Positions 22,477 to 38,426 of a stretch of DNA of 64,000 nucleotides are shown piece by piece. How positions within the stretch are numbered: position 1 is the first letter of the stretch; each line of letters begins with the position of its first letter. The position numbers and the translations under genes were made by a program. Below the pieces are notes generated by a model. That model made no database searches, was not told where the DNA came from, and saw only the letters and a list, made by a program, of their open reading frames with translations. The stretch lies in IMG/VR virus record IMGVR_UViG_3300042566_001512, positions 62,001 to 126,000 of that record, one strand, 5' to 3'.

Positions 22477-22552
22477 GGGACGTTAGCTCAGCGGTTAGAG
22501 CAGAGGACTCATAATCCTTTGGTCAGGTGTTCAAATCACCTACGTCCCACCA
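22477..22552 (+). tRNA. trnI-CAU: tRNA with CAU anticodon, most likely tRNA-Ile2 (Met not excluded)
   Basis: Full 76-nt cloverleaf GGGACGT...ACGTCCC-A-CCA with GAGGA-CTCATAA-TCCTT; D and anticodon arms resemble E. coli ileX; TilS gene nearby. Confidence 0.93.
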
Positions 22553-27331: not shown

Positions 27332-27408
27332 CTGTCTGTAGCTCAACTGGATAGAGCAGCTGCCTTCTAAGCAGCAGGTCGGGGGTTCGAGTCCCTCCAG
27401 ACAGGCCA
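27332..27408 (+). tRNA. trnR-UCU: tRNA-Arg(UCU)
   Basis: CTGTCTG/CAGACAG-G-CCA; GCTGC-CTTCTAA-GCAGC; TTCGAGT. Confidence 0.96.
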
Positions 27409-29163: not shown

Positions 29164-29649
29164 ATGTGTGCTATTAATTTTACCGTTGCGCAGCTATTTG
29201 CCATTGCGGCGGGTGTTTCGTTTTCGGTCATCTGCGCCATCTCTCTAATCATTATCGTTTTCTTGAACATCGATAATCTTCGAAATCCTGTTAATAATAA
29301 ACTTGAATTTGATGACTGGTTTGTTAGACAATTCATCTCGCTATTTAACCGGCAGTGTGGTAATCGCTGGTACGAATCAAGGGCCCATTTGCGCCGAGGC
29401 GTATTCGTATCTCTGCTGTGCGCATTTAGCTTGATCGATATTGTGCGTTATGAATTCGAGACTGGAGAATACGGCCGGTTTGTAACAGGTGCCAAGTTTT
29501 ATTTGGGGTTTAGGTCCTACCGTGCACTTCTGAAGAAAGTAATATCGGACAAAAACAAGGTACAGTCTTCTATCAAGGAAGCACAATACTTTTCCCAAGT
29601 GTTTATTGCCGGTCATAACGTGGCTTATTCCATCTACGATGAAAACTAA
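29164..29649 (+). CDS. Membrane-anchored hypothetical protein, paralogue of 35895-36389
   Basis: N-terminal TM; shares CGNRWYESRA and GVFVSLLC with the paralogue. Confidence 0.7.
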   Translation: MCAINFTVAQLFAIAAGVSFSVICAISLIIIVFLNIDNLRNPVNNKLEFDDWFVRQFISLFNRQCGNRWYESRAHLRRGVFVSLLCAFSLIDIVRYEFETGEYGRFVTGAKFYLGFRSYRALLKKVISDKNKVQSSIKEAQYFSQVFIAGHNVAYSIYDEN

Positions 29650-29707
29650 TTAATAGAAATCATAAACCCCACCATGGCAATAGACCATGGTGGGGTTTAT
29701 TCTGTAT

Positions 29708-29890
29708 TTATTTTTTTAAACAGTGCACGGCGCTTGCATTCCTGTTGCAATAATCTATCCAGCCCACTGGCGCGGGAGCCTCATCTAGCGGTTTAAATTC
29801 CTCCGGTTTAGGTGAACAACTAATAAGAAGTGCAGTTAAAGTGGCTATTACAATTTGTACCATTTGTTTTTTATTTGAATTTTGTCCCAC
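29708..29890 (-). CDS. Small lipoprotein carrying a BTLCP N-terminal-like motif
   Basis: Basic N-region, hydrophobic core and LISC lipobox; APAPVGWIDYCNRNASAVHC. Confidence 0.7.
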   Translation of the reverse strand: MGQNSNKKQMVQIVIATLTALLISCSPKPEEFKPLDEAPAPVGWIDYCNRNASAVHCLKK

Positions 29891-30210
29891 TTATATGGAA
29901 GATCCTGTTTAATCATTGGGTTTTTGTATCTGTTATCCAGAACATAGTCCCCTGCTGGCAAAGTGACAATAAGCACAGCGTGATATCCTTGAGTTTCAAC
30001 CCAGCAGGTTGCTAATTTTAAATTGTCGGGGTTTAAACCTTTTTCTATTAAGAGTTTCCTCTTCTTCAAAGCGTAATCTTCACAGTCTCCATATTTCAAT
30101 GGAATTTCCCAATACTCGGTTTTTCCATGAACATTTATATCTGATCTATAAACGATTTCTGTATTAACCTTTTGGTTAATTTCAATCAAATCTTTAAGCG
30201 TCAGGCTCAT
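29848..30210 (-). CDS. Transglutaminase-like cysteine peptidase (BTLCP/C93, LapG-like), catalytic domain only
   Basis: GDCEDYALKKR (Cys), YHAVLIV (His), VLDN (Asp). Confidence 0.9.
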   Translation of the reverse strand: MSLTLKDLIEINQKVNTEIVYRSDINVHGKTEYWEIPLKYGDCEDYALKKRKLLIEKGLNPDNLKLATCWVETQGYHAVLIVTLPAGDYVLDNRYKNPMIKQDLPYKWDKIQIKNKWYKL

Positions 30211-30532
30211 CTTGAATAACTTCTTGAACAGGATGAAGATTCAATTCTGATAGAACTGCTTGAAGATCCCCAAATTTAATGATTCTTGTCCAATCAACTT
30301 GGTTAGAAATGGATTCTAACTCGGAATTGTAAAAATAGCCAGAAGTTAGGCAGTGAGTAGCTGGTGCGTTTTCTTCTGTGCTAGTGGTAAACTTCGTAGA
30401 AAAATAATCAGGAAAGTCTTGCTTAGCACGTTCCTGGAATTCAATTGGGACAATGACTGTAGCAAAAGTGGATTGCATTTTAGATTCCTTGTTAGATAGG
30501 TGTTTTTTGTTGTACGTACTTTTCGGTAGCAA
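30194..30532 (-). CDS. Small hypothetical protein in the tail-associated cassette
   Basis: Overlaps both neighbours; true start may be the internal Met (MQSTFAT). Confidence 0.55.
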   Translation of the reverse strand: MLPKSTYNKKHLSNKESKMQSTFATVIVPIEFQERAKQDFPDYFSTKFTTSTEENAPATHCLTSGYFYNSELESISNQVDWTRIIKFGDLQAVLSELNLHPVQEVIQDEPDA

Positions 30533-32291
30533 TAATCTGCTCGGTTGAGCTTTGTGCGCCGCGGACGATCAGGCTGTAGATGCGGCCGTTGAGCCAAAGC
30601 GAAGAGCCAGCGCGAGCGCCGATGTAGAGCGGGTTGTTTGCAAACTTTGTCTTTGTATTTATGCCACCTGATGCGTCTGTAAGCGTCTCTTGCGCTCCAT
30701 TAACATTTAATCTCATGGCGCTGGAAAAATTACCTGCATCTGAATCTGCTATATAAGTCAAAACTGAACTGTTCGGAGCGTTCTTATTTGTTGTACGGCC
30801 AGACCAAAATGCAGCGTTGCTTGTACCAATTCCGACAGCATAGCCAGTCAATGAGCTAGATACGCTAGAGTGCACGCTAAATGAAGCCCACGTTGATCCG
30901 TTGAAACTCTCAACAATTACGGGGAAAGTAGCATCACTCAACTTCCGCACCCCAGCCCACACCGTCATCTTGTCGGTGCTGGTGAAGTTGATGCTGTTCG
31001 TCTGCATCCAGCTATTCGTGCCGTTGAAGCGCAGGTACATCGGGAACGCTGTTGTGTCATAGTCCCCAACTAAACTCCCAACGCGCTGATAGGGTGGTAA
31101 ATTTGCCCCCTCATTGGTAACGCGTAAATCAAATTCACTTACATCATAAGATTCCCCACCAGTACACGTCAGATTGCCGTTGCCTGACGCACCGCGAATA
31201 AAAATATGCGGTGCTGTAAATGCGTGCGTACTGACTACTGACAAAAACAGCCTGTAACTATTGCTTTCGCCTTGAATAGCAACCAATGACGCAGTACCGC
31301 CCAATGAGTTAGCATTACTGCTGCCTATTTGACCAGTCCCAAGATTTACGTAAGCATTGACCGCAAAAGTTGCATTGATGTTATATACTTGAACGTAAAC
31401 CCAATCAACATTTACTTTTTTTATCTTAACACTAAAAGTGTGTAGCGTATTATTAGCTTGGGACCCAACACTAATGACACGACTGACGTTTGCGGTTCCT
31501 GGGGTTGAAACAGTAAAAATAGACCCAGAAATTACGGCATTTGTGGGCGTAAATGTTGAAATGTTATTGGTAGCTGTTAACAAGTTGTACCGAGCCGACA
31601 GCACAGGCCGATTGGCCGCGGTGGACTGCGTGGCGTGGTTGCCGGGGAGTTCTTTTGCTGTAATGTTGTCGTAATCAACCGTTGCTGTAGCCGATGTGTT
31701 GAAAATACGGCAGTGCAGGTAGAGCGTGGTTGTCGCTGTTGCGGTGTAAATGAATGACTTTTCTCCGTCAGTTGAAGAGATGTCACTACCAGCAATAAGT
31801 GTGGAAGACGCTGCGTCAGCTCCATTACGCAAAGCAAGTTGTACTGTTGTAAACGACCCATTAACCAGAGTCACCCCACAGCTTATTTTGTAGGTCTTGC
31901 CAGAAATAACAGGAAACGCTTGGTATGCAGATTTACCTTGTGATTCGGCAATTGTTGTCGAAACTCGCAGCTTCCCAGAAACCCAAGAAATATTCGAAGC
32001 AGCACTGCCAGCAGTCCACCCATTGATATTTGTATCAAACGTGCCGTTCGTCACCAACTCAGGACCAAGCACCAGCCCCATTCTCTTGTCCAGCATCAGC
32101 CCAACTGGTTTCTCCACTGTAGTAATCGGAATAGTACCGGCGCTATCCTCAAATAGAGTACTCATGTCGCTAGGGTCCCACCATGCGCCCGGCTCTCCAG
32201 AAGAAAAAAGATTTTTTACATAAAGCTCTTCGCTCATTAATGTTGCAACGGCCTGAGCGATTGCCGTTAGTCTAGTGGACCTAAGTAGCAT
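30492..32291 (-). CDS. Putative tail fibre/appendage protein with carbohydrate-binding and LamG-like domains
   Basis: GAWWDPSDMSTLFEDSAG, GPELVTNGTFDT, SGKTYKIS, and PLYIGARAGSSLWLNGRIYSLIVRG. Confidence 0.6.
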   Translation of the reverse strand: MLLRSTRLTAIAQAVATLMSEELYVKNLFSSGEPGAWWDPSDMSTLFEDSAGTIPITTVEKPVGLMLDKRMGLVLGPELVTNGTFDTNINGWTAGSAASNISWVSGKLRVSTTIAESQGKSAYQAFPVISGKTYKISCGVTLVNGSFTTVQLALRNGADAASSTLIAGSDISSTDGEKSFIYTATATTTLYLHCRIFNTSATATVDYDNITAKELPGNHATQSTAANRPVLSARYNLLTATNNISTFTPTNAVISGSIFTVSTPGTANVSRVISVGSQANNTLHTFSVKIKKVNVDWVYVQVYNINATFAVNAYVNLGTGQIGSSNANSLGGTASLVAIQGESNSYRLFLSVVSTHAFTAPHIFIRGASGNGNLTCTGGESYDVSEFDLRVTNEGANLPPYQRVGSLVGDYDTTAFPMYLRFNGTNSWMQTNSINFTSTDKMTVWAGVRKLSDATFPVIVESFNGSTWASFSVHSSVSSSLTGYAVGIGTSNAAFWSGRTTNKNAPNSSVLTYIADSDAGNFSSAMRLNVNGAQETLTDASGGINTKTKFANNPLYIGARAGSSLWLNGRIYSLIVRGAQSSTEQIIATEKYVQQKTPI

Positions 32292-32294
32292 TTA

Positions 32295-33410
32295 TCACCC
32301 CAGTTCTGTTATTTCTAATATACCGTTTACGCTGCTGGCGGAGTCTCTGATAGCTGCTATAGAGGAACCAGCGACCACTCCTAAATCTAGGCGCTCATCT
32401 TGACCTATAAAGTGACTACTGGATGAATTGGCTGATAAATTACCCACGCCCACCACATAGCGAATGTTGCTGTTTCTTGCTCTTATAGATATTCTTTTAC
32501 ACGTCTCGGTCAATGTAGACTGAGAAGTAGTTGCGTTTGCTGCCAACTGACGAGCTACCAATGGAACACTTAACGGCTCTACCGGTATTCTTTGTAAACC
32601 GGGATCTATCTCTTCCAAGGATATCTTCAAATTCCCGCCAGCTGTGGCGTGTATATTAGTGTAATTGCCATTAGGCATAGCTGCAGCCAATACAGCCTTT
32701 ATTAGTTCGGCATCATTTTCGCCAGTTATGTTGTCGCCCACCCTGTGGCTCGATGGTTTTACATAACCTTGTTTATATATAGTGTTTATGAAAAAGCCTT
32801 CGGTTCCCTGTGTTCCGTTTATGTATTTTATACGAAAATATTTTCCACCCGGCGCCATGGAGTAAATACTAATACCCGCTGATTGATTATAACTATAACT
32901 CTCTAAATCATACCAGCTTTGTTGATTATTAGAGGCTTGAAATAATATTCCGTTGTTAGCAGACGGGACATTAGATCTTAAAGATACCAATATAGTTCCA
33001 TATTGGCTAACTTCGTCTGGCTGACCTGTAAAGGTGCCATTTGCCAATAGTTGCGCAACGGTGCTGTTGTTTGTGCTACTAAAAGAACTTATCTTTACGG
33101 GTACAGGCGTTGATTCGTCGTTATTTATAGTGGTAATGGTAGACGAAGCCGCATGAACGGTTACTACGGCGGTGTATACGTTACCAAGGCCTCTGACATA
33201 CAGGCTCTCTTGATTTGAATTTACTACAGTGGTCTCACCTATCTTAAGGTGCTGACCGTCTGTTTCGTTATCAGGAACTTCACTTTTTGGCCATATGTAG
33301 ACGGAACCTTTAGATTTATTTTGTATGAATACGTCCTTGTCGTTAGTTACGCCCAACTCAGCATAAAGGTCGACCCATTCGTTATTTAGTTGTATTTCTT
33401 TAGCGATCAT
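32295..33410 (-). CDS. Putative virion structural protein
   Basis: Beta-strand and S/T/N-rich 371-aa ORF in the cassette. Confidence 0.45.
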   Translation of the reverse strand: MIAKEIQLNNEWVDLYAELGVTNDKDVFIQNKSKGSVYIWPKSEVPDNETDGQHLKIGETTVVNSNQESLYVRGLGNVYTAVVTVHAASSTITTINNDESTPVPVKISSFSSTNNSTVAQLLANGTFTGQPDEVSQYGTILVSLRSNVPSANNGILFQASNNQQSWYDLESYSYNQSAGISIYSMAPGGKYFRIKYINGTQGTEGFFINTIYKQGYVKPSSHRVGDNITGENDAELIKAVLAAAMPNGNYTNIHATAGGNLKISLEEIDPGLQRIPVEPLSVPLVARQLAANATTSQSTLTETCKRISIRARNSNIRYVVGVGNLSANSSSSHFIGQDERLDLGVVAGSSIAAIRDSASSVNGILEITELG

Positions 33411-33439: not shown

Positions 33440-33934
33440 TTAAGCTTCGTTAGTGGAAACAGTTCCAGAATTTGACACAATATTGAGTTTACCGTTGGAC
33501 GGCATAGACACTTCCTTTGGCCAATAGTAACCCACTACGCGACCTTTGTCGAATTTAGCAACAGTTACGGAGTTACCTTGATTACCACCTAATACAGATA
33601 GGAAGCCGTCGGTGGTCTGACCCATTACAAAACCAACATGACCGCCTCCGGCCCGTTTAAATACTACTACGCAGCCATTTACTGGAGAACTCAATTTAAC
33701 GCCCCATTCGGCCCAGGCCAGAGCCCTCATCCAGTTATTAGGTACAGAAATATTGCAAGTCTTCATGCAATGTGCTACAAATGTGCCGCACCAAGGAGTC
33801 TCGTCCTCACTCCACCATGCTTTTAAAGATTTCAACCAGCCAAGGATAACAGAGTTGTGTTTAGGTCCCGGTATCTCTTTTAGCCCGATGTGCTTCTTGG
33901 CTTCTACAATCCATGGATAGTCCATTTTAATCAC
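33440..33934 (-). CDS. TIGR02594-like CHAP/NlpC peptidoglycan hydrolase
   Basis: PWIVEAKKHIGLKEIPG, DETPWCGTFV (Cys), GGGHVGFV (His) and LGGNQ. Confidence 0.85.
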   Translation of the reverse strand: MIKMDYPWIVEAKKHIGLKEIPGPKHNSVILGWLKSLKAWWSEDETPWCGTFVAHCMKTCNISVPNNWMRALAWAEWGVKLSSPVNGCVVVFKRAGGGHVGFVMGQTTDGFLSVLGGNQGNSVTVAKFDKGRVVGYYWPKEVSMPSNGKLNIVSNSGTVSTNEA

Positions 33935-37075: not shown

Positions 37076-38426
37076 ATAATACCACGAATAATATTCGTGG
37101 TATTATGCTGTTACTTGTTTTTGTATTAATAAACAACTACATATTACTTATTTGATTTAACTTTAAATAGATGTAACATGTTAAAAGACACTTTTTTAAA
37201 TAAGCTAAAAGAAAATAACCTTACTCATCTTGAAAAATATGATTATTCCCTAGTACCAAATGAGTTTACCACTACCAGATATAGTAATAAAATTAAGATA
37301 ATTTGCCCTGAACACGGTATATTTGAACAAAATACACGCGCTCACCTGGCTGGCGCTGATTGCAGGCTATGTATAAGAAAACGCATTACCGATACCGCCG
37401 AGTCGTTTATTACCAAAGCCAAAATAAAACACGCTAACCGTTACGATTACTCTAAAGTCATTTATAAAAACAGTTCAACACATGTAATTATTGTTTGTCC
37501 TAAACATGGCGCGTTCATTCAGGTTCCAGGTGCCCACTTAAGCGGTAAAGGGTGTGCGGAGTGCGGAAAAGAAATTATGATGAGTAAGCTTAAGTCAACT
37601 AATGAGGAATTTATTTCAAAGGCCAAATCAAAGCACAGTGATAAATATAGTTATGATCTTGTAGACTATAAAAATAATGTTAAAAAGATAACTATTACTT
37701 GTCCCGATCATGGTAACTTTTTACAGATACCATCTGATCATTTAAGCGGTAGAGGTTGCCCGCAGTGTGCAAAAAATAGTTTTGCAGCTAAAATGAAATA
37801 CACCAATCAAGATTTTATAGAAAAAGCAAATTGTAAACATAATTTTAAATACGCTTATAATAAAGTAAACTATATAAACGACAAAATCAAAGTAATAATT
37901 TCTTGCCCAGTAAGAAACCACGGGGATTTTAGTCAAGTGCCTAATCAGCACCTGCATGGTCAGGGTTGCCCAAAGTGTAGAGAATCTTTTGGTGAAAGGT
38001 TTATTTCTCAAATTTTAGATAACTATAAAATCGATTATAAAAGAGAATATAAAATAAATGGATATAAGTACAAGTATGATTTTTACTTACCTAAATACGA
38101 TATCTATATTGAATATCATGGTAGACAGCACTATCACGCGATTAAGTATTTTGGTGGCGTTAAAGCCTTAAAATATATAAAAAGAAACGATAAAATAAAA
38201 GAAGAATTAATAAAGCGATCAACTGGAATGTTAATAGTTATTAAACACACGTTCAACACTTTTGGAAAAATCGAAGATGAGATACTAAGATTAATATCAG
38301 TAATACATCCTCCGTTTTTAAGTGATTTAAGCACGCTAGGGGCTTCTGTTGCTAATTCAAAAATATATTTAATTAATAATGGAATTGTGTATTTTAGAAA
38401 ATAATTTAATCCTTGCTCCAGTGGGG
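36903..38426 (+). mobile_element. Endonuclease element flanked by 16-bp direct repeats, carrying a replacement 3' end of its target gene
   Basis: CCTTGCTCCAGTGGGG at 36903 and 38411; homologous C-termini follow both copies. Confidence 0.7.
37178..38404 (+). CDS. Putative homing endonuclease with Zn-ribbon repeats and a PD-(D/E)XK/Vsr-like domain
   Basis: Four 'I.CP.HG.F.Q....HL.G.GC..C' repeats; ESFGE...YDFYLPKYDIYIEYHGRQHY. Confidence 0.8.
   Translation: MLKDTFLNKLKENNLTHLEKYDYSLVPNEFTTTRYSNKIKIICPEHGIFEQNTRAHLAGADCRLCIRKRITDTAESFITKAKIKHANRYDYSKVIYKNSSTHVIIVCPKHGAFIQVPGAHLSGKGCAECGKEIMMSKLKSTNEEFISKAKSKHSDKYSYDLVDYKNNVKKITITCPDHGNFLQIPSDHLSGRGCPQCAKNSFAAKMKYTNQDFIEKANCKHNFKYAYNKVNYINDKIKVIISCPVRNHGDFSQVPNQHLHGQGCPKCRESFGERFISQILDNYKIDYKREYKINGYKYKYDFYLPKYDIYIEYHGRQHYHAIKYFGGVKALKYIKRNDKIKEELIKRSTGMLIVIKHTFNTFGKIEDEILRLISVIHPPFLSDLSTLGASVANSKIYLINNGIVYFRK

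What the first reader, a model, noticed from the sequence alone, without database searches (positions are those of the whole stretch)
29708..30210. BTLCP/LapG-type protease split into two genes in permuted order, with the N-terminal piece as a lipoprotein
Seen: the upstream ORF has only the catalytic core (GDCEDY, HAVL, VLDN) and no signal peptide. The overlapping downstream ORF (43-nt overlap) is a lipoprotein ending PVGWIDYCNRNASAVHC. Known: single-chain BTLCPs have a signal peptide, then a P-[IV]-G-x-x-x-[FY]-C...C segment, then the catalytic core; LapG cleaves the LapA adhesin to disperse biofilms. Inference: a two-chain protease whose activity depends on meeting a membrane-anchored partner, for example at lysis or adsorption.
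Basis: partly seen in the sequence, partly recalled or inferred. Interest (0 to 1): 0.7.

Follow-up and report, generated by a model that had tools for sequence, protein, structure and literature searches.

The report
Phage protease split into two genes
A freshwater jumbo phage, like many uncultured phages, encodes a BTLCP-type cysteine protease as two overlapping genes: a catalytic core with no export signal, and a small lipoprotein carrying the enzyme's missing first segment. The two chains should therefore meet only once the inner membrane is breached.

Summary
Window 29848-30210 (-) encodes a 120-aa BTLCP core (Pfam PF06035, 110 bits) that covers only profile positions 39-149 and has no signal peptide. 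Overlapping it by 43 nt, 29708-29890 (-) encodes a 60-aa lipoprotein. Its mature part is homologous to the N-terminal segment of single-chain BTLCPs (hhalign 96.7%, E 4e-10), and it is the only hit to that motif among 5,790 frames of the 208.8-kb genome.

The split is not an artefact. It recurs without indels in independent samples. The small gene is under purifying selection. Of 68 viral locus clusters, 27 have the permuted pair, 25 a colinear pair and 1 a distal partner. All 80 best bacterial loci are single-chain. Natural single-chain circular permutants also exist.

It is a BTLCP but not a LapG equivalog (32 bits against a 320-bit cut-off), and it does not meet the spanin definition.

Most likely it is a two-chain enzyme. 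The disulfide-bearing fragment is pre-placed on the outer membrane, and the cytoplasmic core reaches it only when the inner membrane is breached at lysis. Physical binding, the gating step and the substrate are all inferred. The one complex prediction gave no verdict.

The parts
29848..30210 (-). BTLCP catalytic core, 120 aa. It has no signal peptide and no N-terminal motif. Catalytic residues are C43 (30082-30084), H77 (29980-29982) and D92 (29935-29937).
   Evidence: Pfam PF06035 9.8e-32, profile positions 39-149 of 162. Triad columns are invariant or nearly invariant in A1 and A3. 4,844 relatives at E<=1e-3.
29708..29890 (-). Partner lipoprotein, 60 aa, GTG start. It lies in frame -1 relative to the core and overlaps it by 43 nt.
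   Evidence: ORF list. Only genome-wide hit to the N-motif HMM. hhalign 96.7%, E 4.4e-10 to the N-terminal segment of full-length BTLCPs. In the close relative L172 the start is ATG where the window has GTG, a change that is synonymous in the core frame.
29816..29890 (-). Signal peptide with lipobox L22-I23-S24-C25 (lipobox 29816-29827). Ser at +2 argues against inner-membrane retention under the E. coli rule.
   Evidence: Read from the sequence. A lipobox is present in essentially all partner ORFs of related loci.
29720..29770 (-). BTLCP N-terminal motif P41-x-G-W-x-x-Y-C48-x-R-x-x-x-x-x-x-C57, with a presumed C48-C57 disulfide.
   Evidence: Alignment A2 has invariant C1, C24 and C33. Same motif in 56 full-length BTLCPs. 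The motif is ordered (pLDDT 89-96) in the AF2 model of single-chain P0076.
29848..29890 (-). Dual-coding overlap of the two genes. It holds an A_AAA_AAC heptamer that is not conserved in relatives.
   Evidence: Only 2 differences in about 46 nt against L172, versus 84% identity overall. The heptamer is C_AAA_AAC in L172. L002 has an AGGTGG Shine-Dalgarno sequence before the partner's ATG.
29662..29700 (.). Bidirectional intrinsic terminator closing the minus-strand operon. It is shared with the convergent gene at 29164-29649.
   Evidence: Terminator scan: 16-17 bp stem with 8 GC pairs, on both strands.
30194..30532 (-). Upstream ORF (112 aa from TTG, or 94 aa from the internal ATG) that overlaps the core start by 17 nt. 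Function unknown. Conserved as a 94-aa gene in L172.
   Evidence: No Pfam, PHROG or NCBIfam hit.
33440..33934 (-). First gene of the same minus-strand gene string: a CHAP/TIGR02594-type peptidoglycan hydrolase, 164 aa.
   Evidence: Pfam CHAP 1.2e-7. TIGR02594 2.5e-45. phrog_1259 2e-42. Homologues lie beside the BTLCP pair in L042, L043 and L047.

Best explanation
The two overlapping genes encode the two chains of one BTLCP (Pfam PF06035) transglutaminase-like cysteine peptidase that was split by gene fission. Here the two pieces sit in permuted order.

Shown:
- The 120-aa chain has the complete Cys-His-Asp core, but lacks both an export signal and the family's first ~35 profile positions.
- The 60-aa chain is a Sec/Lol lipoprotein. 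Its mature 36 residues are the homologue of exactly that missing segment, including its conserved Cys pair.
- The pair is conserved under selection in many phages, in both gene orders.

Inferred mechanism:
1. The fragment is exported early, forms its disulfide in the periplasm and is tethered by its lipid, probably to the inner face of the outer membrane.
2. The core accumulates in the cytoplasm, as a canonical signal-less endolysin does.
3. The chains can meet only when the inner membrane is breached, by holin lesions at lysis.
4. The fragment then docks where the N-terminal segment sits in single-chain enzymes. This gives a membrane-tethered, lysis-timed peptidase acting on an envelope target.

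The target is unknown. Candidates by analogy are capsule or adhesin export components, or outer-membrane tethers.
For: Homology of the two halves:
- Pfam covers profile positions 39-149 in the core, against 4-158 in single-chain P0076.
- hhalign maps mature lipoprotein residues 4-36 onto residues 1-34 of mature P0076 (96.7%, E 4.4e-10).
- The lipoprotein ORF is the unique genome-wide hit to the motif HMM.

The segment is part of the fold:
- In the AF2 model of P0076 (pLDDT 93.2) the motif has pLDDT 89-96. The only floppy loop (residues 31-40, pLDDT 71) is where phages split the gene.

Permutation is tolerated:
- Natural single-chain permutants P0066 and P0061 run signal peptide, core, then motif at the C-terminus.
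- P0066 models at pLDDT 95.9, with the C-terminal motif at 94-96.

Co-occurrence:
- 68 viral clusters comprise 27 permuted, 25 colinear, 1 distal partner, 12 single-chain and 3 uninformative.
- Every core-only locus with intact flanks has a partner.
- The 80 best bacterial loci are all single-chain.

Selection on the small gene:
- dN/dS is 0.07-0.37. Against L172, synonymous sites are saturated while pN is 0.23.

Compartments:
- 0 of 68 split viral cores and 2 of 66 short representatives have a hydrophobic N-terminus.
- The partner's two motif cysteines are invariant.
- All 7 versions embedded in large, cytoplasm-assembled phage proteins lack the second cysteine.
- One variant (P0003/L177) gives the core its own signal peptide yet keeps a separate lipoprotein partner. 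This places the complex in the periplasm.

Envelope and lysis context:
- A CHAP hydrolase lies in the same gene string.
- Lysin-type genes lie beside the pair in L042, L043, L047 and L176.
Against: - No direct evidence that the chains bind.
- No route of the core to the periplasm has been shown, and no holin was identified near the pair.
- Neighbours of the pair across 77 viral loci are heterogeneous: HNH endonucleases, terminase, methyltransferases, integrase. Lysis genes are not enriched. The pair therefore behaves as a mobile accessory cassette, not a fixed part of lysis modules.
- Two partners have Asp at +2 (L078, L088), so outer-membrane sorting is not universal.
- The host is unknown, so a Gram-negative envelope is assumed only from the lipobox and the family's distribution.
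- The core might be stable and active on its own.
Confidence: 0.5

Rival explanations
1. Both chains act together in the periplasm throughout infection. The core leaves the cytoplasm by an unrecognised route. The enzyme remodels the host surface while the cell is alive, either HvyA-like (blocking capsule) or LapG-like (releasing an adhesin). It is not gated by lysis.
For: - Characterised cellular BTLCPs act in the periplasm of living cells, on capsule (HvyA, PMC4241560) or on the adhesin LapA (LapG, PMC4359373).
- The pair behaves as a mobile accessory cassette, and BTLCP is the most frequent 'AMG' in river phages.
- The P0003/L177 variant exports the core with its own signal peptide.
Against: - 0 of 68 split viral cores have any export signal.
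- The partners' n-regions carry no consistent twin-arginine motif that would allow piggy-back export.
- Sec exports unfolded chains (established knowledge).
Confidence: 0.2
2. The two products work separately. The core is a cytoplasmic peptidase or deamidase that is sufficient alone. The lipoprotein has its own job, for example superinfection exclusion, or acting as a decoy for host BTLCP partners.
For: - The compartments of synthesis differ.
- Small phage lipoproteins near tail genes often mediate exclusion (own knowledge: T5 Llp, Cor).
- The core retains the full triad.
Against: - The lipoprotein's only conserved part is the enzyme's own missing segment.
- That segment is retained even in Cys-less virion versions, and in natural permutants it is fused back to the core.
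- The two genes stay adjacent, usually overlapping, in either order in 53 of 53 informative clusters.
Confidence: 0.15
3. The small ORF is an o-spanin (Rz1-like) or other lysis lipoprotein. Its resemblance to the BTLCP N-terminus is incidental.
For: - It is a short Pro-rich lipoprotein, encoded in another frame and overlapping the end of the upstream gene, as in overlapped Rz/Rz1 pairs.
- Weak PHROG hit to an Rz-like spanin (E 0.049).
Against: - The overlapped upstream gene has no transmembrane domain or coiled coil, so there is no i-spanin.
- Homology to BTLCP N-termini is significant.
- The same fragment occurs upstream of the core in 25 clusters, and fused to it in others.
- A separate membrane-protein plus lipoprotein pair exists elsewhere in the genome, although PHROGs did not call it a spanin.
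Confidence: 0.05
4. A single polypeptide is made by programmed -1 frameshifting at A_AAA_AAC in the overlap. Alternatively, the split is a decaying pseudogene or a sequencing artefact.
For: - A canonical slippery heptamer lies in the core frame, and the partner is in frame -1.
- All 30 permuted partners examined are in frame -1.
Against: - The heptamer is not conserved: C_AAA_AAC in L172, and none in L002.
- Partners have their own start codons and, in L002, a strong Shine-Dalgarno sequence.
- A fusion would bury a signal peptide mid-chain.
- There are no indels in independent samples.
- Purifying selection acts on the small gene.
Confidence: 0.04

Closest known systems
Single-chain periplasmic BTLCPs (Pfam PF06035) of Alphaproteobacteria, the family that includes Caulobacter HvyA
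   Same: - Same domain and the same Cys-His-Asp triad.
- Same N-terminal P-x-G-[WFY]-x-x-[FY]-C-x-R-x-P-x-x-C segment.
- 35-45% identity to the window core.
- Act in the periplasm (PMC4241560).
   Different: - Cellular forms are one chain with a Sec signal peptide: 80 of 80 loci.
- Here the signal and segment are a separate lipoprotein encoded after the core.
- Whether HvyA itself is the nearest characterised relative was not tested.
LapG, the calcium-dependent periplasmic protease of the Lap biofilm system
   Same: - Same fold. The model of the single-chain relative matches LapG at Z 13.8, with Foldseek E 5.7e-8 to 1.7e-6.
- Same GDCED catalytic-site motif.
- LapG is bound by a membrane-anchored partner, LapD, through a G-W-x-Q loop (PMC4359373). 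That is the nearest precedent for a BTLCP held by a Trp-bearing membrane-tethered segment.
   Different: - The core is not a LapG equivalog: 32.4 bits against a 320-bit cut-off.
- LapG aligns only to the core, not to the motif segment.
- LapD sequesters a complete enzyme at the inner membrane, whereas here the partner is a piece of the enzyme itself.
- No LapD or LapA context is present.
Rz/Rz1 spanin gene pairs
   Same: A small Pro-rich lipoprotein gene lies in another frame and overlaps the upstream gene. Its product is predicted to sit on the periplasmic face of a membrane.
   Different: - The upstream product is a soluble enzyme core without a transmembrane domain.
- The partner is homologous to BTLCP N-termini.
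- The PHROG spanin hit is not significant.
Vasohibin-SVBP
   Same: A transglutaminase-like cysteine protease that needs a small separate partner chain. Vasohibin chains appear among the weaker fold matches, Z about 6.9.
   Different: It is eukaryotic, and the partner is an unrelated helix, not a fission product of the enzyme. This is an analogy only.
Canonical signal-less endolysins released by holins
   Same: The logic proposed here is the same. An envelope-active enzyme is kept in the cytoplasm until the holin opens the inner membrane (established phage biology, own knowledge).
   Different: Endolysins are complete enzymes. Here a second lock is proposed, because part of the fold waits on the other side of the membrane. 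That step is not demonstrated.

Membership tests
BTLCP / Pfam PF06035 Peptidase_C93 | Profile match above the gathering score | tested here: met
   Core scores 110.4 bits against a cut-off of 27, E 9.8e-32.
BTLCP / Pfam PF06035 Peptidase_C93 | Cys-His-Asp catalytic triad | tested here: met
   C43, H77 and D92 align to invariant or nearly invariant columns of A1 and A3.
BTLCP / Pfam PF06035 Peptidase_C93 | Whole domain, including the N-terminal Cys-pair segment (profile positions about 4-38), on one polypeptide with an N-terminal signal peptide | tested here: not met
   The core covers only profile positions 39-149 and has no signal peptide. The segment and the signal lie on the separate 60-aa lipoprotein. 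Single-chain P0076 covers 4-158.
LapG (NCBIfam NF045674 equivalog) | Score at or above the equivalog cut-off | tested here: not met
   32.4 bits against a cut-off of 320.
LapG (NCBIfam NF045674 equivalog) | Works with a LapD receptor and cleaves a LapA-type adhesin | not testable with these tools
   The host is unknown, and no such genes were seen near the pair in the window.
o-spanin (Rz1-like) | Lipoprotein signal with a lipobox | tested here: met
   L-I-S-C25 follows a KK n-region and a hydrophobic core.
o-spanin (Rz1-like) | Gene embedded in, overlapping or adjacent to an i-spanin gene (N-terminal transmembrane domain plus periplasmic coiled coil) | tested here: not met
   The overlapped gene is the soluble BTLCP core, and none of 68 related cores has a hydrophobic N-terminus. 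The PHROG spanin hit has E 0.049 only.
Programmed -1 frameshift fusion | Conserved slippery heptamer in the overlap | tested here: not met
   A_AAA_AAC is present in the window but not in L172 (C_AAA_AAC) or L002.
Two-chain (fragment-complementing) enzyme | Physical association of the two chains that restores the fold | tested here: inconclusive
   The only direct test gave no usable answer (see Tried and rejected). Indirect support comes from co-occurrence, selection, natural permutants and an ordered motif in the models.

The most novel reading that the evidence does not exclude
Phages have repeatedly split a periplasmic enzyme across the inner membrane. An exported, disulfide-bonded, lipid-anchored fragment waits in the periplasm, and the signal-less catalytic core joins it only through holin lesions. 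This would be a natural split-enzyme 'AND gate' that limits an envelope-remodelling protease to the moment of lysis. It would define a new, widespread class of phage egress factor, acting on capsule, adhesins or outer-membrane tethers.
Probability: 0.3. Interest if true: 0.85.

Novelty: new variant of a known kind. Interest (0 to 1): 0.66.

Why it matters
- BTLCP was reported as the most frequent 'auxiliary' gene in single-virus genomes from river water (PMC11283719), yet its role in phages is unknown. I found no paper in the searched library that notes most phage copies are split.
- Cultured-phage records hold only distant copies. The three I inspected are single-chain.
- Annotation pipelines see a truncated peptidase plus a hypothetical small lipoprotein, or a spanin candidate, and so miss that the two belong together.
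- If the chains complement each other only after membrane breach, this would be a natural split-protein switch using cell compartments as the lock. It would be a new handle on how phages treat the outer envelope at egress.
- The full evolutionary series is present in nature: N-fused, colinear split, permuted split, C-fused circular permutant and Cys-less virion form. That makes it a good system for studying gene fission and circular permutation.

Tried and rejected
- Complex prediction: core alignment A1 with mature lipoprotein alignment A2 scored 0.30 against a mark of 0.32, and the controls were not run. That is no verdict, so I use it neither for nor against binding.
- Pfam, NCBIfam and PADLOC on the 60-aa ORF: no hit. 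Pfam PF06035 run over the six frames of the genome at E<=10 found only the core. The motif is too short for the whole-domain profile, so I built a motif HMM and used hhalign instead.
- Near-identity DNA search against cultured phages: only a 57-nt match, which lies in a tRNA gene.
- tblastn of the core against cultured phages: nothing at 1e-8, and 21 distant hits at 1e-2.
- Word-index protein search with the lipoprotein: one relative only. The ESM Atlas look-alike search returned generic small lipoproteins below the useful score.
- MAFFT of whole mature lipoproteins together with the permutants scattered the fragments over the core (A6). I replaced that alignment with trimmed motif pieces (A7). 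In A7 the last ~7 residues of the core-only rows are still misaligned onto the motif Trp.
- No tool returns model coordinates. So I could not test whether the motif occupies the same site in the N-fused and C-fused models, nor whether it mimics LapD's GWxQ loop.
- PHROG and Pfam tallies of the pair's neighbours show no enrichment of lysis genes. Only the top 25 families are shown, and the gene calling in the flanks was crude.
- PHROGs did not identify the membrane-protein plus lipoprotein pair elsewhere in the genome as a spanin.
- The hairpins after the in-frame TGA in L064 and L067 are not more stable than shuffles, and they have no Rfam match.

Full report
**What is there**

The window is part of a 208.8-kb IMG/VR virus record estimated 76% complete. 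It comes from lake water and is also present in other freshwater samples.

A minus-strand gene string reads in this order:
- a CHAP/TIGR02594 peptidoglycan hydrolase (33440-33934);
- two large proteins without database matches (32295-33410 and 30492-32291);
- a small ORF (30194-30532);
- the 120-aa BTLCP core (29848-30210);
- a 60-aa lipoprotein ORF (29708-29890) that overlaps the core by 43 nt in frame -1;
- a strong bidirectional terminator (29662-29700).

The core matches Pfam PF06035 at 110 bits, but only over profile positions 39-149 of 162. Its stop-to-stop frame is 130 aa, so no signal peptide or N-terminal segment can be hidden upstream. C43, H77 and D92 are in place.

The small ORF has a KK n-region, a hydrophobic core, the lipobox LISC, a Pro-rich linker and the sequence PVGWIDYCNRNASAVHC, followed by LKK.

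**Is it more than chance?**

Full-length relatives of the core carry P-x-G-[WFY]-x-x-[FY]-C-x-R-x-P-x-x-C about 60-100 residues before GDCEDY.
- An HMM of that segment finds exactly one of the 5,790 open frames of the genome: the lipoprotein ORF (E 1.7e-4; next best 0.71).
- A profile of 45 such lipoproteins aligns to the N-terminal segment of a profile of 53 full-length BTLCPs with 96.7% probability, E 4.4e-10.
- Pfam itself includes the segment. Single-chain P0076 covers profile positions 4-158.

Contigs from an independent freshwater study reproduce 29670-30542 with at most one difference and no indel. Relatives about 90% identical in two other samples differ by substitutions only.

A relative with a 73%-identical lipoprotein (L172) has the same architecture.
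- The partner's start is ATG there and GTG here. That change is synonymous in the core frame.
- The overlap is almost invariant, which is what dual coding predicts.

The mature part of the small gene evolves under purifying selection, with dN/dS 0.07-0.37.

**How general is it?**

I searched viral contigs with an alignment of core-only proteins. After removing duplicates this gave 82 loci, which fall into 68 clusters at 90% identity:

| Arrangement | Clusters |
|---|---|
| Partner lipoprotein downstream, overlapping the core's end (permuted; frame -1 in all 30 examined) | 27 |
| Partner upstream, abutting or overlapping the core's start (colinear split) | 25 |
| Partner about 750 nt downstream | 1 |
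| Ordinary single chain | 5 |
| Domain embedded in ~790-aa phage proteins | 7 |
| Uninformative (cut by contig ends or broken) | 3 |

The same query against one genome per bacterial species returned 80 loci. All are alphaproteobacterial and all are single-chain. Cultured-phage records hold only distant copies, and the three I inspected are single-chain.

On a tree of 228 cores, 34 of the 38 permuted loci (the window's own among them) fall in one well-supported clade. Four permuted cases lie among colinear ones, so the order changed more than once.

Natural variants complete the series:
- P0066 and P0061 are single-chain circular permutants: signal peptide, core, then motif at the C-terminus.
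- P0003/L177 has a signal peptide on the core plus a separate downstream lipoprotein partner.
- The large-protein versions keep the motif, but all seven lack its second cysteine.

**Structure**

- AlphaFold2 models the single-chain relative P0076 at pLDDT 93.2. The motif segment is ordered (89-96). The only soft loop, residues 31-40, is exactly where phages cut the gene.
- The natural permutant P0066 models at pLDDT 95.9, with its C-terminal motif at 94-96 and the same short helix over W-x-x-Y-C.
- The fold matches LapG at Z 13.8, but only over the core (model residues 40-163).
- The LapG equivalog model scores 32 bits against a cut-off of 320.

So this is a BTLCP, not a LapG.

**Mechanism**

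Shown:
- The two genes are two halves of one domain.
- They are conserved together, in either order.
- The core has no export signal: 0 of 68 split viral loci and 2 of 66 short representatives have a hydrophobic N-terminus.
- The fragment has a lipoprotein signal and an invariant Cys pair.

Inferred:
1. The fragment is exported and oxidised in the periplasm, then lipid-tethered. Most partners, including the window's, lack Asp at +2.
2. The core stays in the cytoplasm until the inner membrane is opened at lysis.
3. The two chains then assemble into an active, membrane-tethered enzyme.

Three observations fit a periplasmic site of assembly. The partners keep their cysteines. The cytoplasm-assembled large-protein versions have lost the second cysteine. 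The L177 variant exports both chains separately.

Peptidoglycan-hydrolase genes lie in the same gene string here, and beside the pair in L042, L043, L047 and L176. Overall, though, the pair's neighbours are heterogeneous, and it looks like a mobile accessory cassette. That agrees with the report that phage BTLCP genes move horizontally (PMC11283719).

The substrate is unknown. Known BTLCPs block capsulation (HvyA, PMC4241560) or release an adhesin (LapG, PMC4359373). LapG being held by LapD's membrane-anchored G-W-x-Q loop is an intriguing precedent for a Trp-bearing tether. I could not test structural equivalence.

**Rivals**

- Continuous periplasmic action needs an export route for which there is no sign.
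- Separate functions do not explain why the only conserved part of the lipoprotein is the enzyme's own missing piece.
- The spanin reading fails because there is no i-spanin.
- Frameshift fusion fails because the slippery site is not conserved, and a fusion would bury a signal peptide.
- Artefact and decay are excluded by independent samples and by purifying selection.

**Verdict**

This is a new variant of a known enzyme family, and I found no description of the split in the literature I could search.

Noticed in passing
L064:2447-2449 and L067:2450-2452 (related viral loci): In two diverged ~790-aa phage proteins with an embedded BTLCP domain, a single in-frame TGA sits exactly where the closest relative (P0143) has the second motif cysteine. 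The frame stays open for another ~538 codons. A GC hairpin follows about 13 nt downstream in both. This is a candidate selenocysteine or readthrough site. The hairpins are not more stable than shuffles and have no Rfam hit.
   Followed up: partly
P0066 (L174:730-1224) and P0061 (L176:2394-2939): These are natural single-chain circular permutants of BTLCP: signal peptide, core, then motif at the C-terminus. P0061 lies between a phage tail protein (Phage_tail_beta) and a Peptidase_M15_3 lysin.
   Followed up: partly
L177:2586-3205: A variant pair in which the core has its own signal peptide (P0003) and the lipoprotein partner is still separate. It lies directly downstream of a diversity-generating retroelement (bAvd plus reverse transcriptase).
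   Followed up: partly
L062, L066, L080, L082, L087 (viral loci): The BTLCP domain is embedded mid-chain in ~790-815-aa phage proteins. The motif is retained without its second cysteine (for example GWTDFAAHNPDFPLV), which suggests a virion-borne, cytoplasm-folded version of the enzyme.
   Followed up: partly
window 33440-33934 (-): A 164-aa CHAP/TIGR02594-family peptidoglycan hydrolase heads the same minus-strand gene string. Homologues lie next to the BTLCP pair in L042, L043 and L047.
   Followed up: partly
window 29164-29649 (+): A convergent 161-aa ORF with an N-terminal hydrophobic segment and no database match. It shares the bidirectional terminator with the pair.
   Followed up: no
window 22477-22552 and 27332-27408 (+): tRNA-Met(CAT) and tRNA-Arg(TCT) genes. 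The only near-identity match of this region to a cultured phage (Pseudomonas phage 98PfluR60PP, 57 nt) falls inside the tRNA-Arg gene.
   Followed up: no
window 37178-38404 (+): HNH/homing-endonuclease-like gene (phrog_559, 7.8e-64). HNH endonucleases are also the commonest neighbours of the BTLCP pair in other phages.
   Followed up: no
G000:C1:158910-159717 (outside the window; L173:1511-2318): A 141-aa membrane protein followed by a 117-aa lipoprotein with a charged helical tail. It could be a spanin-like pair or an exclusion lipoprotein. PHROGs gave only weak hits (Cor-like, E 0.005).
   Followed up: partly
window 29868-29874 (-): The heptamer A_AAA_AAC lies in the core frame inside the overlap. 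It would shift ribosomes into the lipoprotein frame but is not conserved in relatives.
   Followed up: yes
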